64,000 bases of DNA, from IMG/VR virus record IMGVR_UViG_3300023184_004198, positions 1 to 64,000 of that record. One strand, written 5' to 3'. Numbering within the stretch: position 1 is the stretch's first letter; every line of letters begins with the position of its first letter. Shown here piece by piece: positions 57-40,654 of the stretch. The translations under genes were made by a program, and so were the position numbers. The notes beneath the pieces are model-generated. The model was given only the letters and a program-made list of their open reading frames with translations. It was not told the DNA's origin and did not search any database.

Positions 57-1253
57 ATGTCACAAGAACTATTAGAAAGTCGTTGGGGCGAAACCAAAGA
101 GGCACTGTTAGAAGGTCTTAATGGAACCAAACGCAATAGCATGAATGTTATCCTCGAAAACACTCGTCGCTATTTGAAAGAGAATGCAACAGCAGGTAGT
201 ACTGCTGCTGGCAACATTGCAACACTTAACCGTGTTATTCTGCCAGTGATCCGTCGTGTTATGCCCACCGTTATTGCTAACGAGTTGGTTGGCGTTCAGC
301 CCATGACAGGTCCAGTTGGTCAAATCCACACCCTGCGTGTGCGTTATGCCAACAGCTTGACAGATACTTCCGCAGCCGCTACTTCTGTATCAGCTGGTGA
401 AGAAGCATTGAGCCCATTCAAAATTGCTCAAGCATACTCTACCGTTCCTAGCGGTACAAACACTGCTACCAACTACACTGGCGGCAACACAGCCACCATG
501 GAAGGTACTGGCGGTAAGCAAATCAGCGTTCAAATCCTGAAGCAAGCCGTTGAAGCTCGCACACGTAAGTTGCAAGCACGCTGGACATTTGAATCTGCAC
601 AAGACGCACAAGCCATGCATGGTATTGACGTTGAAGCAGAAATCATGGCAGCATTGGCTCAAGAGATTACCGCTGAGATCGACCAAGAGATTCTCTTGTC
701 ATTGCGCTCATTGGCCGCTACTGAGTTCACATACAACCAAGCTACCGTTTCTGGTACAGCAACATTCGTTGGTGACGAACACGCCGCTTTGGCTGTGTTG
801 GTTAACCGTGTTGCTAACTTGATTGCTCAACGCACACGTCGTGGCGCTGGTAACTACGCTGTGGTTTCTTCTGCTGCTTTGACAGTGTTGCAAAGTGCAA
901 CAACTTCTGCTTTTGCTCGCACCACAGAAGGTACATTTGAAGCACCTACCAACACCAAGTTTGTTGGTACATTGAACGGCTCTATGCGTGTGTTTGTCGA
1001 CAGTTATGCTGCTGACACACAAAGCGTATTGGTCGGTTACAAAGGTTCTTCAGAAGCAGACGCACCAGCATTCTACTGCCCATACATCCCATTGATGTCT
1101 TCAGGCGTTGTGTTGGATCCAAGCACATTCGAACCAGTGGTGTCATTCATGACACGTTATGGTTACATCGAATTGACCAACACTGCATCTAGCTTCGGCA
1201 ACGCTGGTGACTACGTTGGTGAGATCGCTGTGTCTAACCTTTCATTCTCCTAA
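57..1253 (+). CDS. gp23: Major capsid protein, T4 gp23-like
   Basis: 398 aa with gp23 motifs VGVQPMTGPVGQIHTLR, RKLQARWTFE, AEITAEIDQEIL, FYCPYIPL and FMTRYG. Possible prohead protease site YLKE/NATAG. Confidence 0.95.
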   Translation: MSQELLESRWGETKEALLEGLNGTKRNSMNVILENTRRYLKENATAGSTAAGNIATLNRVILPVIRRVMPTVIANELVGVQPMTGPVGQIHTLRVRYANSLTDTSAAATSVSAGEEALSPFKIAQAYSTVPSGTNTATNYTGGNTATMEGTGGKQISVQILKQAVEARTRKLQARWTFESAQDAQAMHGIDVEAEIMAALAQEITAEIDQEILLSLRSLAATEFTYNQATVSGTATFVGDEHAALAVLVNRVANLIAQRTRRGAGNYAVVSSAALTVLQSATTSAFARTTEGTFEAPTNTKFVGTLNGSMRVFVDSYAADTQSVLVGYKGSSEADAPAFYCPYIPLMSSGVVLDPSTFEPVVSFMTRYGYIELTNTASSFGNAGDYVGEIAVSNLSFS

Positions 1254-8600: not shown

Positions 8601-10872
8601 CACCACAGGAAATGCCGTAGTCGGCGGGGACTTGATTGTCAATGGTAATTTGACATATCTCAACATATCATCGTTCAATGTTGAAGATCCCATAATTGGT
8701 CTTGGGCGTGGACCCAACAACGCACCACTGATCTCTGATGACAACAAAGATCGCGGTACTGATTTATTTTATTTTGACACAACAGAAAAACAAGCCTTTG
8801 TTGGATTCAAAGACTCAACTGGTAAAATGTTTGCTGCAACTGATGTCAGCATCGCCAACGAAGTGGTCACAGTCAACAGTTATGGAAGTTTTGTAGTTGG
8901 GCAGTTAGAAGGTGCCACAGTAAGCACCACAGGCAATATAACAGGCAGTTACTTCATTGGCAACGGATCTACGTTAACTGGTGTAGTGGCCACAGCAATT
9001 GGTGTGTTGCCAAGTTTGAGTGTGACTGGCAATATCATCACAGGCAACTTGAATTCGTTAGGACAAGTAAGTGCAGTGGCCAATGTTGTTGGCGGTAATA
9101 TCAGTACCGCAGGATTGATCACAGCCACAGGTAATATCACAGGTGGCAACATTGCCACAGGTGGACAGATCACCGCAACCGGCAATATCACAGGTGGTAA
9201 CATCATGGGTGGTGCCAACGTCAATGCCACAACCCACACAGGTACCACAGTTTCAGTAACTGGTAATATAACTGGTGGTAATATTTTAGGTGGTGCTAAC
9301 GTTAATGCCACAACCCACACAGGTACCACAGTTTCAGTAACTGCTAATATCACTGGTGGAAATTTAAATTCTGCTGGATTGAGTTTGAGTGGCAATGTTG
9401 TATCACCATTCAATGTCACTGGTAATATCACCGGCGGCAATGTTATAACTCCAGGACTAATTACTTCAACTGGAAATATCACCGGCGGCAATATTATTTC
9501 TATTGCGGTAGTCAGTACAGTATCTATTGTTGCTACAGCAAACGTCTCTGGAGGCAACATTACCACAGCAGGACAAGTAAGTGCCACTGGCAACATAACT
9601 GGTGGCAATGTCATTACAACAGGTTTGGCCACGGTAACAGGTAATGTCATTGGTGGCAATGTTACCACTGTAGGACAAGTAAGCGCGACGGCTAATATCA
9701 CCGGTGGCAATTTAATCACTGGTGGCTTGGCCACAGTAACTGGTAATATCACAGGTGGCAACATCGCCACAGCCGGTTTAGTAACAGCAACTGGTAATAT
9801 TGTGTCTGGTGCACTGATTTCGGCCGCAGGCAATGTGTCAGCCGCAGGCAATGTATTTGCTCAATACATTTTTGGTAACTTGGTTGGCAGCATTTCTCTG
9901 TCTAGTTCTTCTAACAGTCAAATATTGTTCAACAGTGCAGGAATTATTACAGGCGATACAGGACTGACATTTGATTATGCAGCCAACGCACTCACTGTAG
10001 GCGGCGCCATAACAACTACCAATGGTGGAAGTTTAACAGTTGGTGGTGGTGCTACAATTACTGGAAACATTTCTACCACAATTGGCAACATTGGTGGCGG
10101 CAATATTTTGGCCACAACATTGGTCAGTGCTGGTGGCAATGTCACTGGTGGAAACATTACCACAGCAGGTTTAATAACTGCTACTGGAAATGTCACTGGT
10201 GGCAATGTTAATTCTGGCGGTTTAGCAAGCATAACTGGAAATGTCATTGGTGGTAACATATCCACAGCAGGTTTAATAACTGCCACTGGAAATGTCATCG
10301 GTGGCAATATCATCACATCTGCATTGGTACAAGGACTCACTGTAAGTGCTACTGCAAACGTGGTTGGTGGTAATGTCAGCACAGCCGGATTGATTACGGC
10401 CACTGGTAACATCACCGGTGGTAATTTAAACACTGGCGCACAAGTTGTAGCAACTGGTAATATCACTGGCGGCAACATCAATGCAATAGGACTGATTTCA
10501 GCAGTTGGCAACATTGTTGGTGGTAACTTGTCGGGTACCAGCATTGTTGGTACGTTGACCACAGCCGCACAAAACAACATCACCAGTGTGGGCACACTAA
10601 GCAGTCTTAATGTTACGGCTAATATTGTTGGCGGCAACATTAACACAGCAGGACTAGTATCGGCCACAGGCAACATCGTTAGCGGAAACTTAAACGCAGT
10701 GGGATTGAGTCTAAGTGGCAATGTAATCAGCGCAATCAATTTGACCGCAAACATAACAACAACTGCCAATGTCAACGCCAATAATATCAACGCTACAAGC
10801 ACGATAAATATCAACAACGCTAGGGTAGCAACCATAGATGACGCGGCTGCACTGGCAATAGCATTAGGATAA
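5605..10872 (+). CDS. Long fibre protein with gp9/gp10-like baseplate-attachment N-terminus and extensive GNITGGN repeats
   Basis: N-terminal IDIGAAANDGTGEPLRDAFNAVNENF resembles the T4 gp9/gp10 N-terminal motif. More than 20 NITG units in 1755 aa. Confidence 0.8.
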   Translation: MAQQIIDIGAAANDGTGEPLRDAFNAVNENFTEIYTAGPVGSNVVISGNTITVTGVNNNLVLKANGIGNIQANSSIMPSIDAVYDIGAPTARIDTVYAAYFVGNGQGITGITTAGTSINSGTSNVKIVSANGNVTVSVNGTSNVAVFGSTDSNIKGNLAVGNLSTAGQITAASNITGGNIRTVGSVSATGNITGNYILGNGALLSGIITSVSNINNGNSNVNIQNAGANVTVSVNGIANTVVFGSAATTFTGNIVPGANNVYTLGTATQRFKNIYLSGNTITLGDSTFTANADSVILTNPVGGTFTIQGTSQLSGSSIVNGLSQMAIPVANGNVQVSVGTTANALVISATNMQSIGNILANNQISAAGNIVTSGFFVGNFVGNVTGNLVVPGVNTQILYNNFGNAGASAAFRFDSTSNVLTLTGNAQVGNVRTVGQVSATGNVTGNYFIGNGSLLTGIAATYSNANVATYLASGTNTSNIITTANIAGGNLSLTGAFSPSSFSSAGNVTGGNLRTAGVVSSAGNIITDGYFVGTFAGNITGNLTVPGSNTQVIFNNAGNAGASAGFRFDTAGPNLLTVNGNVQTIGLLASSNVSAAGNILANNVVITGLVSAVGSISTTGNITGGNINTAGQVTATANVTGGNLITAGTLSVGSTVSATGNITGSNIITTGSVSAGGDVSLLGNVDGGNIRTVGQVTATGNITGGNILFGIFKLLNNGDAQVGNLTVSNGPGIGNLLVGNIISATGNILTGGNVSATANVVGGNLLAGSGVITTTGNITGGNILAGSGVISTGGNVNGAIFNGNVAFGTGTVSGTGNITGGNVLVSGVLLSTNTVSAAGNVIGGNINTGGNISTSGNVIAQDIRVGPGITGGTISALGNITSANSLNAVSLSLSGNVVSPLNITGNVTSGNIVAVAAVNAVSISASGNITGGNILGGANVNATTHTGTTVSVTANITGGNLNAAGLSLSGNVVSPLNVTGTVTGGNIISVAAMSAATMTTTGNAVVGGDLIVNGNLTYLNISSFNVEDPIIGLGRGPNNAPLISDDNKDRGTDLFYFDTTEKQAFVGFKDSTGKMFAATDVSIANEVVTVNSYGSFVVGQLEGATVSTTGNITGSYFIGNGSTLTGVVATAIGVLPSLSVTGNIITGNLNSLGQVSAVANVVGGNISTAGLITATGNITGGNIATGGQITATGNITGGNIMGGANVNATTHTGTTVSVTGNITGGNILGGANVNATTHTGTTVSVTANITGGNLNSAGLSLSGNVVSPFNVTGNITGGNVITPGLITSTGNITGGNIISIAVVSTVSIVATANVSGGNITTAGQVSATGNITGGNVITTGLATVTGNVIGGNVTTVGQVSATANITGGNLITGGLATVTGNITGGNIATAGLVTATGNIVSGALISAAGNVSAAGNVFAQYIFGNLVGSISLSSSSNSQILFNSAGIITGDTGLTFDYAANALTVGGAITTTNGGSLTVGGGATITGNISTTIGNIGGGNILATTLVSAGGNVTGGNITTAGLITATGNVTGGNVNSGGLASITGNVIGGNISTAGLITATGNVIGGNIITSALVQGLTVSATANVVGGNVSTAGLITATGNITGGNLNTGAQVVATGNITGGNINAIGLISAVGNIVGGNLSGTSIVGTLTTAAQNNITSVGTLSSLNVTANIVGGNINTAGLVSATGNIVSGNLNAVGLSLSGNVISAINLTANITTTANVNANNINATSTININNARVATIDDAAALAIALG
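9223..9343 (+). repeat. Exact 40-bp direct repeat with 81-nt period inside the fibre gene
   Basis: AATGCCACAACCCACACAGGTACCACAGTTTCAGTAACTG at 9223-9262 and 9304-9343. Confidence 0.9.
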
Positions 10873-29576: not shown

Positions 29577-30815
29577 ATGTCGTTTTTTGGGCAGGACTTT
29601 CTCAAAGGTATAGACCCAAACTTTGGTGCTAATTTAAAAAATGGTTTCTTAGGCAACAATGTCTTGCGTGACTACCAACACGCAAGTCGCACTTTTACCA
29701 CCAACGCTTACGAACTCAAGCCTCGATACAAGTTTCTCTTCCATGTTAGTTTTACACTTAATCTAGCAGAAGTTCCTTACTTGCGGGGCGCATTTGACAA
29801 TGATGACATAACCAATCTCAGCCTAGCAGTTAAAACCATTGACTTGCCAAAATACAACATTGAAACTGAAACTTTAAATCAGTACAATCGCAAAAGAATC
29901 ATACAGAAAAAACTCAACTATGATCCAATAAGTGTGACTTTTCATGACACCAGTGGTGATTTGATTCGCAAGATGTGGTATTACTACATGAACTATTACT
30001 ACAAAGATTCTTCACAGCGATATCTTGATCCCAACAATACCAATGGAGCCAACGGGTTTGATGCACAACGTCAAGCAGGATTCGGTTACAATGCCAGAGA
30101 CATCTATGCCAAGGAACGTGTGGGCAATGTCAACGACTGGGGATACATTGGCGAAGCATTCAATGACGGAAGCACTGCTGGCGCTGCTGGCGGTAAGCCT
30201 GCATTCTTTAGAGACATAAGAGTCTACGGTATGGACCAACGCAAATTTGCCGAGTATGTGTTGATTAATCCCTTGATTACCAATTGGAGTCACGATCAGT
30301 ACAATTATGCTGAAGGTGGTGGTACCATGCAAAATTCAATGACCATTGCCTACGAAACTGTGAAATACTATTCAGGTGCTGTGGGCAAGGCACAATCGGG
30401 TGGTGATCCCAATGTACAAGGTTTTGCCACAGATGCACACTATGACAAAACACTGAGCCCTATTGCCAGACCAGGCTCAAACGCCACAGTGTTTGGTCAA
30501 GGCGGCTTGTTGGAAACAGGCGCAGGCATCATTGGCGACTTGCAAAGTGGCAGTGTGTTGGGACTCATTGGTGCTGCACAAAAAGCCGGGCGACTCAACC
30601 AAACATTCAAAGGTAAAAATCTTGCTGCCATTGCCAAGAGCGAGGCTGTGGCGCTGGGCACTCAGACTCTGCAACAAGGTTTGCCTGCCGCCACAAGAGC
30701 AGTGGCTAACAAGGCTGATGGTTGGATATTCCCCACACAAACGTTTAATAGAAACAACACAGGTACCAATCAAACACAGGCAGAGACCAATAGATTATTA
30801 AATACAAGACGATGA
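29577..30815 (+). CDS. Tube-fold baseplate protein (gp54/gp48-like)
   Basis: AVKTIDLPKYNIETETLNQYNRKR...YDPISVTFHD...ITNWSHDQYNY...MTIAYE, a second gp19-like fold. Confidence 0.65.
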   Translation: MSFFGQDFLKGIDPNFGANLKNGFLGNNVLRDYQHASRTFTTNAYELKPRYKFLFHVSFTLNLAEVPYLRGAFDNDDITNLSLAVKTIDLPKYNIETETLNQYNRKRIIQKKLNYDPISVTFHDTSGDLIRKMWYYYMNYYYKDSSQRYLDPNNTNGANGFDAQRQAGFGYNARDIYAKERVGNVNDWGYIGEAFNDGSTAGAAGGKPAFFRDIRVYGMDQRKFAEYVLINPLITNWSHDQYNYAEGGGTMQNSMTIAYETVKYYSGAVGKAQSGGDPNVQGFATDAHYDKTLSPIARPGSNATVFGQGGLLETGAGIIGDLQSGSVLGLIGAAQKAGRLNQTFKGKNLAAIAKSEAVALGTQTLQQGLPAATRAVANKADGWIFPTQTFNRNNTGTNQTQAETNRLLNTRR

Positions 30816-31171
30816 GCACTGTAAATTATAATAATCCCAATGTAGATTTGACTGTTAAAGTTTTTGATCGATTCTATGCTTATGAAGCCAATGTGCCTGC
30901 GGCAGAGTATGATATTGTGTACAGTTATTTTTTGAGTGTGATGAGCACTCGTCAGGCTGCCGGCAACTTCACTGTGAGTTTGTTTAGAGTGGCAGAAAAT
31001 ACCGGCATATCACCTCTGACATTGTTGGATGAATTCAAAGGCACAAATGGCATAAATCTCAGCGCCAGTTTGGCTTATTATCTCAATGCTGTGCGCAGTG
31101 CTGCCACACTGTTGGGTGTGGGTGTTGCAGTGGTACCTAACTTTTATCAGGCTAGAAACGTACTGCTATGA
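30812..31171 (+). CDS. Hypothetical structural-module protein
   Basis: 119 aa, with TAAATA at 30799-30804 upstream. Confidence 0.55.
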   Translation: MSTVNYNNPNVDLTVKVFDRFYAYEANVPAAEYDIVYSYFLSVMSTRQAAGNFTVSLFRVAENTGISPLTLLDEFKGTNGINLSASLAYYLNAVRSAATLLGVGVAVVPNFYQARNVLL

Positions 31172-31599
31172 GTCGTTGGGCGCAAGGCAACTATGTCATA
31201 ATAAATCGTGAAAAGTACGCAGGCAACGGCACACCGCGTTACAGATCAGGTTGGGAACTGAGTTTTATGAAATTTTGCGACACCAATGATCATGTGTTGC
31301 AATGGGCAAGCGAAAGTATTGCTATTCCATATCGTCATCCCATTACAGGCAAGGTCACACAGTATATTCCAGATTTTTTGATCACTTATCGCAACAGGGA
31401 CAACACTGTGCGAGCAGAGTTGATTGAGATCAAACCCAAAAGTCAAAGTGTAATTGAGTCAAAGATGAACAGCAGAGATCGTGCTGTGGTAGCCATCAAT
31501 TATGCCAAGTGGGACGCCGCTACCAAATGGGCTAGAAAAAACGGCCTGACTTTTAGAGTGATCACAGAAACCGATATGTTTCACAACGGTCGTGCTTGA
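31168..31599 (+). CDS. gp4: Head completion nuclease, gp4-like (TnsA-N fold)
   Basis: YRSGWELSFMKFCD...WASESIAIPY...YIPDF...LIEIKPKSQ...NYAKWDAA...FRVITE. Confidence 0.9.
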   Translation: MSRWAQGNYVIINREKYAGNGTPRYRSGWELSFMKFCDTNDHVLQWASESIAIPYRHPITGKVTQYIPDFLITYRNRDNTVRAELIEIKPKSQSVIESKMNSRDRAVVAINYAKWDAATKWARKNGLTFRVITETDMFHNGRA

Positions 31600-32135: not shown

Positions 32136-32155
32136 ATATGTTACAGGAACCTGAT

Positions 32156-32764
32156 ATGAAAAATTTTGCCCATTACCTCGCCGAAAGCGAACGTACATAC
32201 AACTATCGTATCAAAATACTGGGCAAACCGTCCGGTGATTTGGTATCGCAGTTGAAGAAAAAGTTGGATCAATTTGATCCTGTTAAAATGAGTGATCCTC
32301 GTACCACTCCTATACAGATCATTCCCACTGACTTTCCCAACAACAAAAATGACTCAGTAACAATGTTTGACGTGAGTTTCAAGTATCCAGCCATTGAACC
32401 ACAGATCAAACAACTAGCACAGTTGCTGGGACTTGACCCCAATCACATCATCATGCAGACCACACCACACGTGGATGGCCTGGTAGATGAGTATGAAAAA
32501 ATTGATGCTGAAAACAAAGACTTGTTGGGTGACACAGACTATCCTGCTCCTGACGCAGAACAAAAGGCATTGAAGAAAGACTACTCAACTGGTCCTTATG
32601 ATCATGCTGTGTTGAAAAATGCGTACCGTTCAGATTTCACCGTGGCTGGCGGCAAAACACCCGCAGCCAAAACCACAAATGATATTCCAACGGGCAATAA
32701 AAGCCCAATGAGCAAGATCACTCGTCCACCCAAGCCAGCCACTGGCGCTAACCCAAGAGGATAA
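32156..32764 (+). CDS. Probable head-associated protein with CTS-like N-terminus
   Basis: TAAATA at 32133-38 and SD AGGA put the start at MKNFAHYLAE. Confidence 0.55.
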   Translation: MKNFAHYLAESERTYNYRIKILGKPSGDLVSQLKKKLDQFDPVKMSDPRTTPIQIIPTDFPNNKNDSVTMFDVSFKYPAIEPQIKQLAQLLGLDPNHIIMQTTPHVDGLVDEYEKIDAENKDLLGDTDYPAPDAEQKALKKDYSTGPYDHAVLKNAYRSDFTVAGGKTPAAKTTNDIPTGNKSPMSKITRPPKPATGANPRG

Positions 32765-32769
32765 TACAA

Positions 32770-35700
32770 ATGAGTTTCTTTTACGATTTAAACAAAAAAC
32801 TAGACGCCATCCGCCAAACACCAAGCAAGACACATGGTCAATTGAATGAGCGTGATATGGGCAAACACAACAATGCCACCACAGGGTTCAAAGCATTGGC
32901 TGACAAAGCCGGCAAAGAATACGGCAGCAAGGCTGCTGGTGAGCGTGTGGCTGGTGCTGTCAAAGCCAAGATGGCCAAGGCCGGCAAACTAGAAGAAGAA
33001 GAAGGCATGAGCCGTGCTGCCAAAGGTTATGAAAAGTACGGCAAAAAAGGTATGGAAGCGTTGGCCAAAGCCGGACGTGAAGGCAAAGCACTAGACCCTG
33101 TTAGAAAAAAATACGACAAGTATGACAATAAAGAAGTGTCTGAAGACTTTGGTCCAGGTACTGCAGGTCGTAACAGAAATCAAGCAGGCCCAGAGTATTC
33201 CTTCAGCCCAGATACTAAAAACTATAAGACTCCAAATCTTGATAGAAATACTGAAATAGACCGAAAAGGATATGTGACAGATTGGAACAAAGAGATTGTC
33301 AACACAACAATGGGTCCGGATACTCGCGGTAACCAAGCACACATTGGTGCATATACGTCTGATGGTCAAGGTCAAACCAAATATGTAGACAGAACAACAC
33401 CTGGTGTTATCAACAAAATCAAAGACAAACTGGGTTGGGACATGCCTGATCCAGCATATGGTCCAAGACCAGACGAAACACAACGTTTAGCCAAACGTTA
33501 TCCCAAGCCAACACAAGAAAGTGGTGGGCCTGCTCCTGCAAAATCAATGGTTGACAAGCAAGCATCCACAGCAGGACGTACTCCGCCATATGTGCCTCCC
33601 AAGGCCAGCAAGCCAGCCCCCAAGGACAACGGCATGGGTCGTATTGTGCAAGGTACATGGCAAGCAGACCCCAAAGGAACAGTTAAAGCACCTAGTGGTG
33701 ATCCTGAAGGCGTACCAGAATCTAGTGCTCCAATGACACCCAAACAAAAGTCATTTGCCAAGCTGGCACCACCTGCAGACAAAATCACTTTTGCTGACAA
33801 GATTGCTGGCGCCAAAAAAGAAGTTGACGAAATGCTGGGCGATGTGGCTGCTGAGGCAATGAGAGCCGCGCTGGGCAAAGGCAAGCAAACTGTTCAAGGC
33901 ATGGCCGAAGATCAACCCACACATTTTGAAGTGCATTACAAAGACAATCAAAAAGGCCGTACAGCAAAAACCAAAGTCAAAGGGTCTGATGCCAAACAAG
34001 CAAAAGCAGCTTGGAATGACTGGAACAGCAGCAACACACCAGGCCGTTTTACTTTTGTGGCAGTAAAACCTGTGGCCGCTGAGATGGACGAAGGCAATGC
34101 ATTTGACTACAAGTCACCAAGAGATGCTGCACCCAAGGTTGGTAGTGTTGAACGTGGCCACAAGCACGACATTGAGCACACAGCCACAGGTCGTAAAGTC
34201 ACACGCCGTGTGGATGACCAAGGTCATTCAGTTGGTGCCGACGACGAAACAGATACACAACAAGGACCACGTGGACGTGGACGTCCAAAAGGCACTAAAG
34301 GTGCTATTGGTGCCAAAGGCCCGTCAGGTCGTTCTAAGTTGATGACCAAAGAAGGCGATCAAGACATCACTGACCAAGGTGAATACGATCAAGAAGGCGA
34401 CATGGCCAAAGACGACATCAAGACCATTGTGCGTCATGCACAGGCCTTGAGCCGAGTATTAGGCGACAACGACAACTTGCCAGAATGGGTACAATCAAAA
34501 CTGGCCAAGATTGAAGGCATGATGATCAGCATTGACGAGTACATGCAGAATCAAGCCAGCGATGATAGTGAAGAAGAACCCATTGCTGAAAAAGCAGTGA
34601 GCAAGAAACAACAACGTTTCATGGGCATGGTTCACGCAGCACAAAAAGGTGAAAAGCCTGCCAGCAAAGAAGTTGGCAAAGTGGCCAAAACCATGAAGAA
34701 AAAAGATGCTGAAGATTTTGCCAGCACCAAGCACAAAGGCTTGCCTGAAAAAGTCAAGAGCAAAAAGAAAGAAGAAGTTGATGAAAACTCTGAAGAAGGC
34801 AGATTGATTACTAAACAAACTGGTCCAGGACAGACTTCAACTAGTTCAACCACTGGCCGAGTCAGTGCCACAATGGACAAAGGCCAAGTCACTGTTAAAC
34901 CAGCCAAGTCTGGCGGCGTCAGTTACGGCAAAGGCATTTACGACTCAATGAATCGTGAATTAGAACTGATGATTGCTGAATCAATGAGCGTGAACATGAG
35001 CGACTCAACAGAAGGCAACAAGAGTCTGACTGTTACAGCCACAGATGACGATGCAATGAAACTGGCTATGATACTTAAATCAGCAGGCCTTGGTGGCGGC
35101 GACGCACACTCACACGGCGAAGAAGCATGTGATACCTGCGGCATGACAGATTGTGGTTGCGGTGATGTACAAGAAGCGGTGGATGAAAATGCTCCTGATT
35201 GGCCCACCAACACTGAACAGGCTGACAGCAACTTTGGTTATGCTGGTGGATTGAACAAGCCCAAAGCAGACATTGCTGGCGATGGACAATCAACTGTGCC
35301 TGTTGTGGCTACCCGTCCACACAATGATGATCTACGCAGAATCAGAGAAATGGCTGGGATCAAAAATGAAGAACACATTGATCTAGGACCAACATCTCCT
35401 GAAGTTGCTGCCATGTCAAAAGACGAAGTTGATGCTGCATTGAGATTAGGAATGAGCCCAGATATTTCTGGCATGGATCCCGACGAAGTAAATGCACAAT
35501 TTGGCGATAGCAACGATACCCAGTACGAAGACAGCATTCAACGCATGCGTGAAATGGCCGGTATCAAAGAATGGGAAGTTAAACTAGACTCACCACCAAG
35601 AACTGGTGCTTATCCACACGAACTGTATGGCAAAGATAGAGAGAGATATGATGCTGTACAAACAGGATCTGGCCCAGAAAGTCAGAAAGTGCAACAATAC

Positions 35701-36222
35701 TATCAGAATAAAAACGCAGGCAGTTATGATTCTGGACAAAAATACACCGACGAACGTGATGCAGATTACGCAGATAGATTAAATGCTGCACGTGCAGGAA
35801 GAATAGCCAACAATGAATTAACACCTGGTGAATGGATACAAAAAGGAACAAATGCTGTAAGAAAAGCATTTGGCGGACAAGATAAACCACTACAGCCGGC
35901 TAAGACAGTGGTAGACCTTGATGGCCCATCAAACTATCCAAGCGCGAGATATGTTGGCAGTGATGACGCAAATATAAAACGTTACTTAGATCCAAAGGCT
36001 GATGCAGCGTATAAAGCAAGACAAAAGGCATTGTTCCCAGACGATTTTAAAGAAGGAAAGGGCGACGGCAACTTAGCCAACAACGCTAAACCATATGACA
36101 AAGTCACACAGGGTGATGTTATTGCTGGACGTCTTGGCAAAGACGAAAAAGGCGGCAAAGAAAAACAAGTTGAAGAAAGCATTTTTGCTCTCACCAACCA
36201 ATGGAAAGCATACAAGGGGTAA
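32770..36222 (+). CDS. Modular capsid-internal protein (1150 aa) containing a DUF3008-like module
   Basis: Charged, low-structure modules separated by hydrophobic-x-Glu sites. Includes KAVSKKQQRFMGMVHAAQKG...KHKGLPEK (DUF3008-like) and two REMAGIK motifs. Confidence 0.55.
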   Translation: MSFFYDLNKKLDAIRQTPSKTHGQLNERDMGKHNNATTGFKALADKAGKEYGSKAAGERVAGAVKAKMAKAGKLEEEEGMSRAAKGYEKYGKKGMEALAKAGREGKALDPVRKKYDKYDNKEVSEDFGPGTAGRNRNQAGPEYSFSPDTKNYKTPNLDRNTEIDRKGYVTDWNKEIVNTTMGPDTRGNQAHIGAYTSDGQGQTKYVDRTTPGVINKIKDKLGWDMPDPAYGPRPDETQRLAKRYPKPTQESGGPAPAKSMVDKQASTAGRTPPYVPPKASKPAPKDNGMGRIVQGTWQADPKGTVKAPSGDPEGVPESSAPMTPKQKSFAKLAPPADKITFADKIAGAKKEVDEMLGDVAAEAMRAALGKGKQTVQGMAEDQPTHFEVHYKDNQKGRTAKTKVKGSDAKQAKAAWNDWNSSNTPGRFTFVAVKPVAAEMDEGNAFDYKSPRDAAPKVGSVERGHKHDIEHTATGRKVTRRVDDQGHSVGADDETDTQQGPRGRGRPKGTKGAIGAKGPSGRSKLMTKEGDQDITDQGEYDQEGDMAKDDIKTIVRHAQALSRVLGDNDNLPEWVQSKLAKIEGMMISIDEYMQNQASDDSEEEPIAEKAVSKKQQRFMGMVHAAQKGEKPASKEVGKVAKTMKKKDAEDFASTKHKGLPEKVKSKKKEEVDENSEEGRLITKQTGPGQTSTSSTTGRVSATMDKGQVTVKPAKSGGVSYGKGIYDSMNRELELMIAESMSVNMSDSTEGNKSLTVTATDDDAMKLAMILKSAGLGGGDAHSHGEEACDTCGMTDCGCGDVQEAVDENAPDWPTNTEQADSNFGYAGGLNKPKADIAGDGQSTVPVVATRPHNDDLRRIREMAGIKNEEHIDLGPTSPEVAAMSKDEVDAALRLGMSPDISGMDPDEVNAQFGDSNDTQYEDSIQRMREMAGIKEWEVKLDSPPRTGAYPHELYGKDRERYDAVQTGSGPESQKVQQYYQNKNAGSYDSGQKYTDERDADYADRLNAARAGRIANNELTPGEWIQKGTNAVRKAFGGQDKPLQPAKTVVDLDGPSNYPSARYVGSDDANIKRYLDPKADAAYKARQKALFPDDFKEGKGDGNLANNAKPYDKVTQGDVIAGRLGKDEKGGKEKQVEESIFALTNQWKAYKG

Positions 36223-36762: not shown

Positions 36763-37134
36763 ATGAGAGCACAAGAGTTCGTCACTGAAGACAAAGTTGG
36801 TAAAATCAGCAGACGACTTGACACGGCCACAGTGGGCCTGCACAAGTTTCGTGACATGCAATTTGCTGACCGCGTGTATGAACTCAATCGTATCATGATG
36901 GCCGTGGCTTCAACTGACGGCACTTTTGTGCCCGACCTAGATGGCGAATCCTGGGCCGGGCGCAACAACATTGCCGCACCGTACACTCCTGAAGAACAAG
37001 ACATGCTGAAAATGGCCTACAAGGCCATTGGCAGCCACCATGAAGATTTGAATCACGGTGACTTGCGCAGTCAAGAACATCCTGCGGTGAACACCACTAG
37101 TCCTGTGTCAGCGTTCAAAGGCTACCCACGATGA
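36763..37134 (+). CDS. Probable internal head protein with CTS-like N-terminus (paralog A)
   Basis: Starts MRAQEFVTE and ends SPVSAFKGYPR. Confidence 0.55.
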   Translation: MRAQEFVTEDKVGKISRRLDTATVGLHKFRDMQFADRVYELNRIMMAVASTDGTFVPDLDGESWAGRNNIAAPYTPEEQDMLKMAYKAIGSHHEDLNHGDLRSQEHPAVNTTSPVSAFKGYPR

Positions 37135-37631
37135 GCATGCATTCTGCAGCCGAAGTTGATGCTCATATCAAATCTTGGATAGAGCATGTCAGCCAGCCAC
37201 AGGAAAAATTAGACAACTTGCCCGTGTGTCCTTTTGCTAAAAAAGTAGAATATAAACTAATTGACACAAACTTAGATCAATTGGGTATGCCAAACCATGA
37301 TTTGAAATTGATAATTTATATTTTACCTGATGAAGTTTCTGAACAGCAAATGGCCGATCGTTGTTTAGCATTGAACAAGCAATACCCAGATTATGTGTTT
37401 TTACCAGACCACAAAAACAAGCGCACTTATATCAATAATATATTGACCAACAACTGCAAATATAATTTGGTCATGTGCCAACCTAAAGAAGAAATTGAAA
37501 AAAGCAGAGAAAGTCTGTTAAAAACAAATTATTACACATTTTTCAATAACAAATATTGGAATCAAGAGTGTGTATATGAATCCATTGTGCCTAACAACCA
37601 CTGGAGCAAAACAGTGGAGCCAGCCACATGA
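37131..37631 (+). CDS. Hypothetical protein, DUF1415-like CPFA motif
   Basis: WIEHVSQP...LPVCPFAKK; visibly more AT-rich than its neighbours. Confidence 0.5.
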   Translation: MSMHSAAEVDAHIKSWIEHVSQPQEKLDNLPVCPFAKKVEYKLIDTNLDQLGMPNHDLKLIIYILPDEVSEQQMADRCLALNKQYPDYVFLPDHKNKRTYINNILTNNCKYNLVMCQPKEEIEKSRESLLKTNYYTFFNNKYWNQECVYESIVPNNHWSKTVEPAT

Positions 37632-38014
37632 GAGCACGAGAGTTTATCACAGAACAAGCAACGCTGCCTCCTGAGCAAGCAGATCCCATGAATCATGTGT
37701 TTGTGTTGCCTGGAGTAAAATCCAGTGATCCATATCAAATCTATCGACTGGGTGTGGCCATGGCCCGTGCCAGAAGTGATGCTGGCTCAGATGGCATTGC
37801 CGACAACTTTCCAGCCTGGTCTCCTCAAGCTGCATTTGGAGAAGAAGCAGTAGTTGGTGGGTTTAACGCCACTATTGAACCCATAATTGATCAGGCATTG
37901 AAAATGGCCGGCTTGCCTGACAAAAAAATACAAATCAGCACACCCAACAGCCTGGAACCTGCGTCTGTTCAGAAACAAAGCCCTGTGCGGCCATTCGCTG
38001 GCTACCCCCGTTAA
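37628..38014 (+). CDS. Probable internal head protein with CTS-like N-terminus (paralog B)
   Basis: Starts MRAREFITE and ends SPVRPFAGYPR. Confidence 0.55.
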   Translation: MRAREFITEQATLPPEQADPMNHVFVLPGVKSSDPYQIYRLGVAMARARSDAGSDGIADNFPAWSPQAAFGEEAVVGGFNATIEPIIDQALKMAGLPDKKIQISTPNSLEPASVQKQSPVRPFAGYPR

Positions 38015-38692: not shown

Positions 38693-39499
38693 ATGAAAAA
38701 ACTTTTATTTGTGCTGTTGCTCACAGCCGTTAATCTAGCACAGGCCTGGGACCAAACAGCCCCACTTGACCCTGCTCGCTGTCAAACACACAATCCTTAT
38801 GGTTGGGCACAAACCTCAAAACCGGTCACAGCCATTTGCCGCAGAGCATACTTTGTGGCCTATGATGCGGCTGCAAAGATTCCCAACTATGTCACATACA
38901 CATTGACCCCACCCAATGCACTAGGATGCTGGCCAAGAACCAATGCGTTTGTGGCAGATGCAAGTGTGCCCAACGGACCAAGACCAGATGACTACGCTGG
39001 CACCGGCTACGACAAAGGCCATGCCGCTCCTGATGGCGACTTATCTTGGGACCAACAAGTGGAATATGAGTCATTCCTAATGACCAACATGTACCCACAA
39101 CTGGGTGGATTGAATCGTGGCATTTGGAAACTGTTGGAAACGTCAGTGCGTGGCTGGACTGTGCAACAAAATCAGGTGTATACAATCTATGTGGGTGCTG
39201 TGTATGACACTGCCACTGACAAAAAGATTGGCAACGGTGTTGTGGTGCCCACAGGTTTCTACAAGATTGTGATCAATCAAGCCACAGGTGCCATGGCTGG
39301 CTGGTATTTCCGACACGAAGGAGGACAAGGCAATGACTTGACCAAGGCTCGTGCTGCCGTCTCTGCTATTGAAAACAAAGCAGGTGTGAAGTTTGCTTAT
39401 CCTGCCAATGCACGCGAACTGCCCATTGGACAAGAATGGCCTGTGGACTTTGGTGCGTTGACCAATGCCAAACGCCAAAAATGCAAGAGCGCCGACTGA
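38693..39499 (+). CDS. DNA/RNA non-specific endonuclease (NucA/Endonuclease_NS) with signal peptide
   Basis: MKKLLFVLLLTAVNLAQA signal; YDKGHAAP...SFLMTNMYPQLGGLNRGIWKLLE...VVVPTGFYKIV. Confidence 0.9.
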   Translation: MKKLLFVLLLTAVNLAQAWDQTAPLDPARCQTHNPYGWAQTSKPVTAICRRAYFVAYDAAAKIPNYVTYTLTPPNALGCWPRTNAFVADASVPNGPRPDDYAGTGYDKGHAAPDGDLSWDQQVEYESFLMTNMYPQLGGLNRGIWKLLETSVRGWTVQQNQVYTIYVGAVYDTATDKKIGNGVVVPTGFYKIVINQATGAMAGWYFRHEGGQGNDLTKARAAVSAIENKAGVKFAYPANARELPIGQEWPVDFGALTNAKRQKCKSAD

Positions 39500-39514: not shown

Positions 39515-40654
39515 ATGAGCAACTTCTATTGTGCAGCCCCCTGGCGTGGTTTGCACATCAATCCCCGCGGTGATGTTAAAACTTGTTGTGCTGGCAACCC
39601 CAACATGTTGGGCAATCTCAATGGTCAAACAATAGAGCAAATACTCAACTCAGACTTGATGGCTGGTATACGCACCAGTTTGGCACAAGGACAAGCACAC
39701 GACTATTGTTCAAACTGTGTACGTGCAGAACGTTTTGGTGCAGACTCAGAACGTGCCTGGCACAACAATGTAAACCCTGATTTTGATTATAGCACAGCAG
39801 GCAAAGAATATCACTATCCTGTGATAGTGGATGTGCGTTGGAACACCACTTGCAATTTCAGTTGTAACTATTGTGATCCCAGTGCCAGTAGCAAATGGGC
39901 ACAACTAAAACAAGTACCATTCAAGTCAGGTACAAGACCATACTATGAACAAGTGTGTAACTTCTTGGAACAGTATCATGATCACATACATGAAGTTGCC
40001 TTGGTAGGTGGCGAACCATTATTGCTGCCTGAGAACGAACGTCTGTTAGATGTCATTCCAGAGTCTGCTATTGTTACACTGATCACAAACTTGAATGTGG
40101 ACTTGCAGAATAATCGAATATTCCGCAAACTGTCTGAACGCAACAGAGTAGGTTGGAGCATGAGCTTTGATAACATTGGTGAACGATTTGAATACGTGCG
40201 CTATGGCGGATCTTGGACCATGTTGCAAGAAAATTTAAAAGTCATAAAAAGTCTACACCGTGATCGAGGACACTGGGGCGGTGTGCATGCAGTGTACAAC
40301 ATCTACAATGCCACACGATTGTGTGAATTCAGACAATTTGTTGAGGACACCAATAACACAGTGCTGTGGCAAAACTTGTTTCAACCGGAATACCTTGATC
40401 CATTTTTGCATGGAGTGGATGTGGCTCAAGCAGCGGCTGCAGAGATACGTGAGTTATACGGCATGAACATTGCCACACCTGCAGAACGTGTTTTCTTTGA
40501 TCAAGCACTCAGCAAGTATGATTCTATAACTACTGTACAGCCCAAGATTACCGCACAGTTTAAAAGACACATACAAGCAATTGAAACACAATACCATCCC
40601 AGCACAGCAGGCGAGTTTGCAAGACTATGGCCGGAGATTGCACAATGCTTGTGA
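39515..40654 (+). CDS. Radical SAM protein with N-terminal twitch domain (#1)
   Basis: CAAPW...KTCC...CSNC at the N-terminus, then CNFSCNYC and GGEP. Confidence 0.9.
   Translation: MSNFYCAAPWRGLHINPRGDVKTCCAGNPNMLGNLNGQTIEQILNSDLMAGIRTSLAQGQAHDYCSNCVRAERFGADSERAWHNNVNPDFDYSTAGKEYHYPVIVDVRWNTTCNFSCNYCDPSASSKWAQLKQVPFKSGTRPYYEQVCNFLEQYHDHIHEVALVGGEPLLLPENERLLDVIPESAIVTLITNLNVDLQNNRIFRKLSERNRVGWSMSFDNIGERFEYVRYGGSWTMLQENLKVIKSLHRDRGHWGGVHAVYNIYNATRLCEFRQFVEDTNNTVLWQNLFQPEYLDPFLHGVDVAQAAAAEIRELYGMNIATPAERVFFDQALSKYDSITTVQPKITAQFKRHIQAIETQYHPSTAGEFARLWPEIAQCL

What the first reader, a model, noticed from the sequence alone, without database searches (positions are those of the whole stretch)
32770..36222. 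1150-aa 'cassette' protein that looks like a protease-processed polyprotein of injected capsid cargo
Seen: unrelated charged modules of roughly 30-130 aa are joined at recurring hydrophobic-x-(D/x)-Glu junctions (QLNE/, EVSE/, PTQE/, GVPE/, GMAE/, EMDE/, MTKE/, PIAE/, EVDE/, MIAE/, AVDE/, GIKE/, DFKE/, QVEE/). One module is DUF3008-like, and parts (about 33100-33480 and 35570-36050) look more AT-rich. Established: the T4 prohead protease gp21 cleaves after (L/I)-x-E, and T4 internal proteins such as IPI* are injected anti-defence factors. Inference: one gene may deliver a swappable set of small peptides into the host with the DNA.
Basis: partly seen in the sequence, partly recalled or inferred. 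Interest (0 to 1): 0.75.

Follow-up and report, generated by a model that had tools for sequence, protein, structure and literature searches.

The report
Mosaic, probably protease-cut, jumbo-phage head protein
A 1150-residue, mostly disordered protein of an uncultivated freshwater jumbo T4-like phage is built from small interchangeable modules separated by motifs that fit the cutting site of the phage's head-maturation protease, so it is probably chopped into small pieces inside the capsid; neither the cutting nor any injection into the host has been shown.

Summary
The ORF (32770..36222, +, 1150 aa) is real. It lies in the late structural operon of a roughly 350-kb T4-like jumbo phage from lake water, whose nearest cultured relative is Pseudomonas phage PA5oct.

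- There are 20 hydrophobic-x-Glu motifs against 12.8 expected.
- One module is DUF3008-like.
- The two AT-richer stretches are the two rarest accessory modules.

New evidence:
- The family has more than 5000 metagenomic cluster representatives. It has a fixed N-terminal leader ending in (L/I)-x-E, a fixed 14-19-residue C-terminal tail preceded by hydrophobic-x-E, a conserved core, and optional modules.
- Optional modules are gained, lost, moved, and shared with unrelated proteins at up to 83% identity. Each moved copy carries its own V/L/M/I-x-E followed by S/G/A.
- Near-complete relatives encode a T4 gp21-type (Peptidase S77) prohead protease.
- The protein carries two copies of the motif that ends the clade's scaffold protein.
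- The gene at the same position in PA5oct encodes a virion protein. Two module types are virion proteins in cyanophage S-SCSM1.

Cleavage, packaging, injection and anti-defence function are all inferred. No module resembles a known effector. Verdict: a plausible prohead-protease-processed mosaic internal head protein, and a new variant of a known kind.

The parts
32770..36222 (+). Gene for the 1150-aa mosaic protein
   Evidence: ORF. RBS. More than 1751 homologues. 5227 cluster representatives at E<=1e-3, of which 270 are at E<=1e-30.
32770..32850 (+). Conserved N-terminal leader (aa 1-27), predicted helix 2-16, ending in L-N-E. Candidate targeting propeptide with a cleavage site.
   Evidence: Leu-x-Glu kept in 111-112 of 112 close homologues. 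A hydrophobic-x-E follows the leader in 103 of 103 diverse representatives, and 54 different tripeptides follow it. Helix.
32851..33144 (+). Two helical-hairpin modules, M01 (aa 28-81) and M02 (aa 82-125). Both are optional and mobile.
   Evidence: pLDDT above 90. Present in 92 and 158 of 269 homologues. Found at other positions in P0175, P0198, P0249, P0027 and P0223, each copy flanked by hydrophobic-x-E.
33145..33519 (+). Accessory disordered module M03 (aa 126-250).
   Evidence: GC3 0.288. Present in 38 of 269 homologues. 83% identical copy at aa 1335-1459 of the otherwise unrelated 1589-aa P0223. Low depth in lake metagenomes compared with the flanks.
33910..34092 (+). Rare insert M06 (aa 381-441), a small beta-alpha-beta, bounded by G-M-A-E and E-M-D-E
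   Evidence: Absent from nearly all aligned homologues. Present in 10 of 269. Strands and helix. Depth falls to 0 in three of four runs.
34093..35349 (+). Conserved collinear core (aa 442-860, modules M07-M12), which includes the DUF3008-like module
   Evidence: Present in 198-262 of 269 homologues. Single copy in three near-complete relatives. P1 Glu at 528, 607, 672, 737 and 806 is a local conservation peak (0.72-1.0, against 0.40 for other Glu columns).
34594..34755 (+). DUF3008-like module (aa 609-662)
   Evidence: The stand-alone cyanophage S-SCSM1 homologue (69 aa) is annotated as a virion protein from mass spectrometry.
35128..35160 (+). Four-cysteine knuckle C-x2-C-x4-C-x-C (aa 787-797)
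   Evidence: Read from the sequence. The Cys columns are conserved in about 80% of close homologues. Similar Cys clusters occur in P0223 and PA5oct EST35_0203.
35332..35364 (+). First copy of the scaffold-tail-like motif, L-R-R-I-R-E-M-A-G-I-K (aa 855-865)
   Evidence: Motif scan: 4 hits in the genome against 0.36 expected. The scaffold proteins of relative G001 and of PA5oct end in K-R-L-A-G-L and L-R-R-L-A-G-I-K.
35536..35571 (+). Second copy of the motif, I-Q-R-M-R-E-M-A-G-I-K-E (aa 923-934), ending at an insertion hot spot
   Evidence: Contig joints in a lake metagenome skip from 35565 to 36170.
35572..36054 (+). Rare accessory module M14 (aa 935-1095), helical.
   Evidence: GC3 0.242. Present in 11 of 269 homologues. 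No stand-alone homologue found. Covered by a 698-nt contig in an RNA library.
36178..36219 (+). Conserved 14-aa C-terminal tail after Q-V-E-E
   Evidence: V/I-x-E kept in 120 of 120 close homologues. A hydrophobic-x-E lies within the last 32 residues in 130 of 150 representatives, and the tail is 14-19 aa long.
32138..32764 (+). Upstream neighbour (208 aa), homologue of PA5oct virion protein EST35_0202. It anchors the synteny.
   Evidence: BLASTP E 1e-9. Hits in cultured phages are PA5oct-like phages only. Gene order.
36763..37134 (+). 123-aa ORF starting M-R-A-Q-E-F-V-T-E, which resembles the T4 capsid targeting sequence
   Evidence: The T4 CTS M-K-T-Y-Q-E-F-I-A-E is given in PMC8442874. The family is highly conserved.
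37628..38014 (+). 128-aa paralogue starting M-R-A-R-E-F-I-T-E
57..1253 (+). Major capsid protein (gp23 family), with conserved L-x-E motifs just before the conserved core. The contig begins here, so the portal, protease and scaffold genes are cut off.
   Evidence: Pfam Gp23 at E 2e-97. N-terminus and alignment with T4 and PA5oct.

Best explanation
The gene encodes an internal head (prohead-core) protein of a jumbo T4-like phage, built as a mosaic polyprotein. Its parts are a conserved 27-residue N-terminal leader, a conserved core, optional mini-modules and a conserved 14-residue C-terminal tail. They are strung together by linkers that carry (V/L/M/I)-x-Glu followed by Ser/Gly/Ala.

Inferred mechanism:
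1. The protein is made late, together with the other structural proteins.
2. It is recruited into the assembling prohead. Recruitment would go through its terminal peptides and its two internal copies of the R-x-x-A-G-I motif, which also ends the clade's scaffolding protein.
3. The gp21-type serine protease (Peptidase S77) then cuts it after Glu at roughly 10-16 sites.
4. This yields peptides and mini-proteins of about 15-190 residues.

Modules with their own cut site behave as evolutionary cassettes.

Shown: the architecture, the module turnover, the motif conservation, the protease in relatives, and the structural gene context.
Inferred: recruitment, cleavage, and the fate of the pieces. I lean towards at least some pieces staying in the virion.
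For: Context:
- The operon runs sheath, tube, tube-like, gp4-like head completion, then this gene, with terminase downstream.
- Synteny with PA5oct places the gene at the position of EST35_0203, a virion protein by ESI-MS/MS. The upstream neighbours are homologous.

Protease:
- Peptidase_S77 scores above the Pfam cut-off in all three near-complete relatives.
- It is 35% identical to T4 gp21, E 6e-24.
- T4 gp21 cuts after Glu, and Asp at P1 blocks processing (PMC9026906).

Motif:
- Hydrophobic residues are enriched specifically at P3 before Glu, and not before Asp.
- P1 Glu is never replaced by Asp at 11 sites, while P2 varies.
- The logo is P3 V>L>M>I, P1' S/G/A.
- Glu at 528, 607, 672, 737 and 806 are local conservation peaks in diverse relatives.

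Cassettes:
- Moved modules always bring a flanking hydrophobic-x-E.
- Homology-block ends lie within 3 residues of such a site in 23.0% of cases against a 16.0% baseline. The Asp control is 10.3% against 9.6%.
- In the lake population, core modules have 4-10 times the depth of accessory ones, and contig joints skip accessory parts.

Targeting:
- The scaffold C-terminal motif is shared.

Virion links:
- In cyanophage S-SCSM1, the DUF3008 protein and a protein carrying the K-P-D-F-L-D-L-D-K-D-G module are both mass-spectrometry-supported virion proteins.
Against: - There is no direct evidence of cleavage, encapsidation or injection for any family member, and no cultured phage carries the family.
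- Homology to PA5oct EST35_0203 is not detectable (BLASTP, hhalign). The virion link is therefore positional only.
- Enrichment of the motif in the single sequence is modest (p about 0.02). In PA5oct EST35_0203 and the 503-aa protein it is not significant (p 0.055 and 0.07).
- Val is the commonest P3 residue, whereas T4 gp21 prefers Leu/Ile.
- Some motif copies lie inside predicted helices and are poorly conserved (572, 590, 660, 860).
- The window's own contig lacks the protease gene. That is expected, because the contig starts at the capsid gene.
- Many indel hot spots are plain low-complexity linkers without the motif.
Confidence: 0.5

Rival explanations
1. It is an auxiliary scaffold or core filler. 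The protein enters the prohead and is cut at the same motifs, but the peptides are expelled before or during DNA packaging, as with T4 gp22. The modules are then spacers or binding peptides that help build a very large capsid, not cargo.
For: - It shares the scaffold C-terminal motif.
- It is highly disordered and charged, with near-zero net charge.
- In T4 most scaffold fragments leave the head (PMC8442874), and propeptides of giant phages are cut many times and mostly cleared (PMC10052503).
- No effector-like domain is present.
Against: - A separate gp22-like scaffold already exists next to the protease in relatives.
- The nearly invariant ~190-residue core (aa 673-860) and the mobile accessory modules are hard to explain as filler.
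- The positional equivalent in PA5oct, and two module types in S-SCSM1, are found in mature virions.
Confidence: 0.25
2. It is an uncleaved, intrinsically disordered structural or assembly protein of the tail, neck or head completion region, for example a ruler, tether or chaperone. The hydrophobic-x-Glu motifs are then only a habit of acidic linkers.
For: - The gene sits right after tail tube and head-completion genes, not beside the protease.
- Single-sequence motif enrichment is modest.
- Several motif copies are poorly conserved or lie in helices.
Against: - Length varies from about 550 to 1310 residues among close relatives through insertion of disordered segments. That is unlike a tape measure, and the model is not a long helix.
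- Glu is never exchanged for Asp at 11 sites while P2 varies.
- The enrichment is specific to P3 and absent for Asp.
- Moved modules carry the motif with them.
Confidence: 0.15
3. It is a non-virion late protein, for example a disordered hub acting in the infected cell, and its structural neighbourhood is incidental.
For: There is no direct virion evidence for this family, and no recognisable structural fold.
Against: - It lies in a tightly packed late structural operon with conserved synteny across relatives and PA5oct.
- Module relatives are virion proteins.
Confidence: 0.05

Closest known systems
T4 internal proteins IPI, IPII, IPIII, and Alt (substrates of the gp21 prohead protease that carry capsid targeting sequences)
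   Same: - It has a short N-terminal leader ending in (L/I)-x-Glu. As in Alt, a C-terminal piece is also preceded by such a site.
- The phage lineage has a gp21-type protease.
- Content is variable between related phages.
- Neighbouring small ORFs start M-R-A-(Q/R)-E-F-(I/V)-x-E, close to the T4 CTS.
   Different: - There is no sequence homology.
- It is one 1150-residue chain with many internal sites, instead of small basic proteins cut once.
- Net charge is near zero.
- The leader is 27 residues long and unlike the T4 CTS.
- Packaging and injection are not shown.
Multiply cleaved head and ejection proteins of giant phages phiKZ, 201phi2-1 and SPN3US (PMC10052503, PMC5694885)
   Same: These are jumbo-phage head proteins cut after Glu by a gp21-related protease at several x-x-E sites. 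Some fragments are retained and some are cleared.
   Different: - Those proteases prefer small residues (A/S/G) at P3, and they cut long propeptides off a folded mature domain.
- Here P3 is hydrophobic, there is no large folded mature domain, and the modules are shuffled between proteins.
Polyvalent proteins of phages and conjugative elements (Iyer et al. 2017, PMC5512222)
   Same: These are large multi-module proteins encoded among virion genes. They are proposed to be packaged, delivered with the DNA and processed into units, and their module composition is combinatorial.
   Different: - Polyvalent proteins are defined by enzymatic or effector domains and often an embedded MPTase peptidase.
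- This family has neither. Its modules are 15-160-residue mini-domains or disordered segments, and processing would be in trans by the prohead protease.
Pseudomonas phage PA5oct EST35_0203 (499 aa, virion protein by ESI-MS/MS)
   Same: - It occupies the same position in a syntenic block.
- It is acidic and low in complexity.
- It has three L-A-G-(I/V/L) motifs, a Cys cluster, and an N-terminus followed by V-K-E.
- Its C-terminal peptide ends K-F-K-G, against K-A-Y-K-G here.
   Different: No detectable sequence or profile homology. It is less than half the length.

Membership tests
Substrates of T4 gp21-type (Peptidase S77) prohead protease | The phage encodes an S77 protease | tested here: met
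   Not on the window's truncated contig. Present above the Pfam cut-off in three near-complete relatives that carry the orthologue, and 35% identical to T4 gp21.
Substrates of T4 gp21-type (Peptidase S77) prohead protease | Conserved (L/I or other hydrophobic)-x-Glu sites in exposed regions | tested here: met
   By my reading of the low-pLDDT ranges, about 15-16 of the 20 sites lie in such linkers. That is not significantly above the 62% background.
Substrates of T4 gp21-type (Peptidase S77) prohead protease | Observed cleavage after Glu during head maturation | not testable with these tools
   Needs proteomics or an in vitro assay.
T4 internal proteins (IPI/IPII/IPIII) | A roughly 10-residue N-terminal CTS resembling M-K-T-Y-Q-E-F-I-A-E | tested here: not met
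   The leader here is 27 residues long and of different sequence. CTS-like starts occur instead in the neighbouring ORFs at 36763 and 37628.
T4 internal proteins (IPI/IPII/IPIII) | Small basic protein, packaged in hundreds of copies and injected | tested here: not met
   1150 aa with 177 basic and 180 acidic residues. Copy number and injection are not testable.
Polyvalent proteins (Iyer et al. 2017) | Several enzymatic or effector domains and frequently an embedded MPTase peptidase | tested here: not met
   Pfam finds only DUF3008 in the query and in nine diverse relatives. No structural matches.
Polyvalent proteins (Iyer et al. 2017) | Encoded among virion genes, with combinatorial module architecture | tested here: met
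DUF3008 (PF11450) | Match to the Pfam model above the gathering score | tested here: inconclusive
   Query scores 22.4 bits against a cut-off of 24. Orthologue P0130 scores 25.6 bits. PHROG matches at E 1e-22. 70-76% identity to cyanophage DUF3008 proteins.
Tail tape measure protein | Length conserved within a lineage, long helical chain | tested here: not met
   Lengths range from 549 to 1310 aa among relatives. 62% of residues are predicted disordered.
gp22-type scaffolding protein | Coiled-coil protein encoded between the protease and the major capsid protein | tested here: not met
   A separate 361-aa scaffold holds that position in relative G001, and a 368-aa one in PA5oct. Only the C-terminal motif is shared.

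The most novel reading that the evidence does not exclude
One late gene serves as a combinatorial delivery vehicle. Each mini-module is a cassette with its own prohead-protease site. Cassettes are exchanged between phages and between different capsid-internal proteins. After cleavage, the resulting micro-proteins stay with the DNA and are injected, where some act on the host, for instance against defence systems.
Probability: 0.15. Interest if true: 0.85.

Novelty: new variant of a known kind. Interest (0 to 1): 0.6.

Why it matters
Protease-processed internal head proteins are known from T4 and from phiKZ-like giant phages. Injected multi-domain "polyvalent" proteins have been predicted.

This family would join the two ideas. 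It would be a polyprotein of mini-modules that is processed in trans by the head-maturation protease, in which the cut site is part of the mobile unit.

The family is very abundant in lakes (thousands of sequence clusters) and wholly uncharacterised. If cleavage is confirmed, three things follow:
- It would give a rule for predicting capsid-internal peptides in uncultivated jumbo phages.
- It would give a natural targeting and cleavage toolkit analogous to the T4 CTS.
- It would give a set of candidate injected micro-proteins to test.

Tried and rejected
- Near-identical or protein-level relatives in cultured phages: none apart from the DUF3008 module.
- Homology to PA5oct EST35_0203: BLASTP and hhalign are both negative.
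- Pfam on nine diverse relatives: only DUF3008 and sub-threshold noise.
- Foldseek of the AlphaFold2 model against the PDB: nothing at E<=0.001. The model is mostly low confidence.
- ESM Atlas: only unnamed viral clusters, with scores below 0.8.
- Stand-alone homologues of module M14: none.
- Paralogous modules elsewhere in the 212-kb contig: none.
- Protease on the window's own contig: none. This is explained by the contig starting at the capsid gene.
- T4 late promoter TATAAATA: 3 copies against 1.3 expected, none near the gene.
- PA5oct supplementary proteomics tables are not held.
- Tape-measure reading: rejected on length variability and predicted disorder.
- The MAFFT alignment of the capsid protein with T4 gp23 does not place the T4 cleavage site exactly on the candidate L-K-E site. 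I treat that site only as a candidate.
Full report
**The gene and its genome**

Window 32770..36222 (+) is one uninterrupted 1150-codon ORF. It has an AGAGGA ribosome-binding site and starts 6 nt after the preceding gene.

The window is the first 64 kb of a 212,614-bp IMG/VR virus contig, estimated 61% complete, so the genome is about 350 kb.

The contig begins at a gp23-family major capsid gene (57..1253, Pfam E 2e-97). Its closest cultured relatives, at about 65% identity, are these jumbo myoviruses:
- Vibrio phage 2.275.O
- Pseudomonas phage PA5oct and its kin
- Erwinia and Sinorhizobium phages

The genes around the finding are structural:
- gp13-like adaptor
- tail sheath
- tail tube
- a second tube-like protein
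- gp4-like head completion protein
- two small proteins
- the 1150-aa ORF
- large terminase, further downstream

Runs that hold the sequence are lake-water and freshwater metagenomes.

**Checking the observation**

Two of them have Thr at P3.

[LIVMF]-x-E occurs 20 times, against 12.8 +/- 3.2 in shuffles (p about 0.02).

The DUF3008 resemblance is real:
- Pfam E 1.4e-4, just below the cut-off
- PHROGs E 1e-22
- 70-76% identity to small cyanophage proteins

The two AT-richer stretches are real, and they coincide exactly with two accessory modules. Residues 126-250 have GC3 0.29, and residues 935-1095 have GC3 0.24, against 0.375 for the gene.

AlphaFold2, run with a 116-sequence alignment, gives mean pLDDT 50, with 62% of residues below 50. 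Only short elements are confident. This fits a chain of mini-modules joined by disordered linkers.

**The family**

The protein has more than 1751 homologues in the 90% clusters. There are 5227 representatives of 50% clusters at E<=1e-3, of which 270 are at E<=1e-30. All are metagenomic and none is named. Lengths run from about 550 to 1310 residues.

Alignments show the following regions:
- a nearly invariant 27-residue N-terminus
- a conserved core, roughly residues 318-380 and 442-860
- a conserved 14-residue C-terminus
- variable regions at residues 32-81, 126-300, 377-437 and 934-1095

I cut the query into 17 modules and located each in 269 homologues:
- Core modules are present in 198-262 of them.
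- M01 is in 92, M03 in 38, M06 in 10 and M14 in 11.

Order is mostly collinear, but clear exceptions exist:
- M01 lies after M05 in P0175.
- M02 lies between M08 and the DUF3008 module in P0249.
- M15 lies before M07 in P0198, at 77% identity.
- M03 is 83% identical to residues 1335-1459 of P0223. That protein is 1589 residues long with different termini, and also carries M02-like and M11-like modules.

Two near-complete relatives have a second protein that shares only the M08 helices.

In lake metagenomes, summed contig depth over core modules is 4-10 times that over M03, M04, M06 and M14. Contig joints skip accessory parts, for example 35565 to 36170.

Module gain, loss and transfer are therefore established. 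Free shuffling of the whole chain is not.

**The junction motif**

At the N-terminus, all 103 diverse representatives with a recognisable leader have a hydrophobic-x-E shortly after it. The commonest forms are LNE, LTE, LAE, LDE, LSE, ISE and IAE. After it the sequences diverge completely: 54 different following tripeptides.

At the C-terminus, 130 of 150 representatives have a hydrophobic-x-E followed by a 14-19-residue amphipathic tail.

In close homologues, Glu at P1 is kept in 100% of sequences at 11 sites, while P2 varies and Asp never substitutes. In a more diverse core alignment, Glu 528, 607, 672, 737 and 806 stand out as local conservation peaks (0.72-1.0, against 0.40 for other Glu columns). 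The copies at 572, 590, 660 and 860 do not stand out, and they are probably not functional sites.

Family-wide, a hydrophobic residue is enriched specifically two places before Glu:
- 27.1% at that position
- 18.4% background
- 13-14% at the neighbouring positions
- 15.1% at the same position before Asp

The logo is P3 V>L>M>I, P2 D/E, P1 E, P1' S/G/A.

Every transposed module copy I examined is bounded by such a motif in its new context.

Ends of homology blocks lie within 3 residues of a motif in 23.0% of cases, against a 16.0% baseline. Control motifs give ratios of 0.9-1.2.

**The protease and targeting**

The window's contig lacks a Peptidase_S77 gene, but it starts exactly where that gene would end. 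Three near-complete relatives that carry the orthologue all encode an S77 protease above the Pfam cut-off:
- 352,754 bp with terminal repeats
- 331,654 bp
- 320,175 bp

The first of these proteases is 35% identical to T4 gp21 (E 6e-24), with the His and Ser motifs aligned.

T4 gp21 cuts after Glu in (L/I)-x-E, and an Asp at P1 blocks processing. A 10-residue capsid targeting sequence brings the internal proteins into the prohead, and Alt is trimmed at both ends (PMC9026906; PMC8442874).

The capsid protein here, and that of PA5oct, has conserved L-x-E motifs just ahead of the conserved core. The automatic alignment does not place them exactly on the T4 site.

Next to the protease, the relative G001 has a 361-aa scaffold-like protein that ends K-R-L-A-G-L. 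The PA5oct counterpart ends L-R-R-L-A-G-I-K. The query contains L-R-R-I-R-E-M-A-G-I-K at 855-865 and I-Q-R-M-R-E-M-A-G-I-K-E at 923-934, plus a weaker I-L-K-S-A-G-L-G at 768-775. A regular expression for the motif finds 4 copies in the 212-kb contig against 0.36 expected. From this I infer that the protein borrows the scaffold's capsid-binding tail to enter the prohead. This is inference only.

**Links to virions**

PA5oct has the same gene order. Its EST35_0202 is homologous to the upstream neighbour here (E 1e-9). The next gene, EST35_0203 (499 aa), is annotated as a structural protein found by ESI-MS/MS (93 virion proteins in PMC7318152).

EST35_0203 shows no detectable homology to the query, but it shares the design:
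- acidic, low-complexity sequence
- three L-A-G-(I/V/L) motifs
- a Cys cluster
- an early V-K-E
- a similar C-terminal peptide

In cyanophage S-SCSM1, virion proteins were determined by mass spectrometry of CsCl-purified particles (PMC9602691). Its stand-alone DUF3008 protein (69 aa) is labelled a virion protein. So is the adjacent 520-aa protein, whose N-terminal region carries the K-P-D-F-L-D-L-D-K-D-G-N-K-K-E-P module. That module is 85% identical over 26 residues to the one that many family members place right after their leader.

**What remains unknown**

Nothing here shows that the protein is cut, packaged or injected.

No module resembles a known anti-defence or effector domain. The anti-defence reading is therefore speculation.

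The fragments could be expelled like T4 scaffold peptides. I give that rival 0.25.

The reading as an uncleaved disordered tail or neck protein gets 0.15. It fits the gene's position, but it does not explain three things:
- the selectivity for Glu over Asp
- the motif travelling with modules
- the length variability

**Verdict**

The best account is a mosaic internal head polyprotein processed by the gp21-type prohead protease, with cassettes that carry their own cut site (confidence 0.5). It works like T4 internal proteins and like the multiply cleaved head proteins of phiKZ-like phages, and it recalls the predicted polyvalent proteins (PMC5512222). It is not a member of any of those families.

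I rate it a new variant of a known kind, with interest 0.6.

Noticed in passing
window 36763-37134 and 37628-38014; genome 204075-204899 and 204905-205546 (outside the window): Four ORFs start M-R-A-(Q/R)-E-F-(I/V)-x-E, close to the T4 capsid targeting sequence M-K-T-Y-Q-E-F-I-A-E. The two in the window are distant paralogues that both end G-Y-P-R. The 123-aa one is very conserved (80-99% identity, fixed length) across more than 1400 metagenomic proteins.
   Followed up: partly
genome 202567-204078 (outside the window): A 503-aa protein with 11 hydrophobic-x-E motifs (7.0 expected, p 0.07), a C-P-E-C-G-G motif and a V-K-K-L-A-G-L motif lies directly upstream of two of the CTS-like ORFs. It may be a second protein of the same design.
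   Followed up: partly
L072 2077-3162 (relative G001) and L004 4725-5831 (PA5oct): The scaffold-like proteins next to the prohead protease end in K-R-L-A-G-L and L-R-R-L-A-G-I-K. The same motif recurs inside the 1150-aa protein, at the C-termini of several family members and in P0223. It may be a clade-wide capsid-binding peptide.
   Followed up: partly
genome 111101-111259 (outside the window): The phage encodes a ribosomal protein bS21 (Pfam E 2.3e-20). Freshwater bS21-encoding huge phages have been described (PMC9723584). I did not test whether this genome belongs to those clades, and the gene context described there differs.
   Followed up: partly
window 37131-37631: A 166-aa ORF with very low GC (0.33-0.35) sits between the two CTS-like genes. 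It is absent from the syntenic relative L002, where the 123-aa and 128-aa genes abut. It is probably a recent insertion (PHROG 10325, unknown function).
   Followed up: partly
window 38693-39499: A 268-aa nuclease (PHROG 14168) has what looks like an N-terminal secretion signal (M-K-K-L-L-F-V-L-L-L-T-A-V-N-L-A-Q-A). It is followed by a radical SAM/SPASM protein at 39515-40654.
   Followed up: no
window 29577-30815: A second, longer tail-tube-like protein (412 aa) directly follows the 208-aa tube protein. PA5oct has the same pair.
   Followed up: no
window 5605-10872: A 1755-aa ORF in the structural region has no PHROG match at E<=1e-5.
   Followed up: no
window 31168-31599: The gp4-like head completion protein also matches endonuclease PHROGs. 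Its orthologue in L002 carries a Tn7 TnsA-like N-terminal Pfam hit.
   Followed up: no
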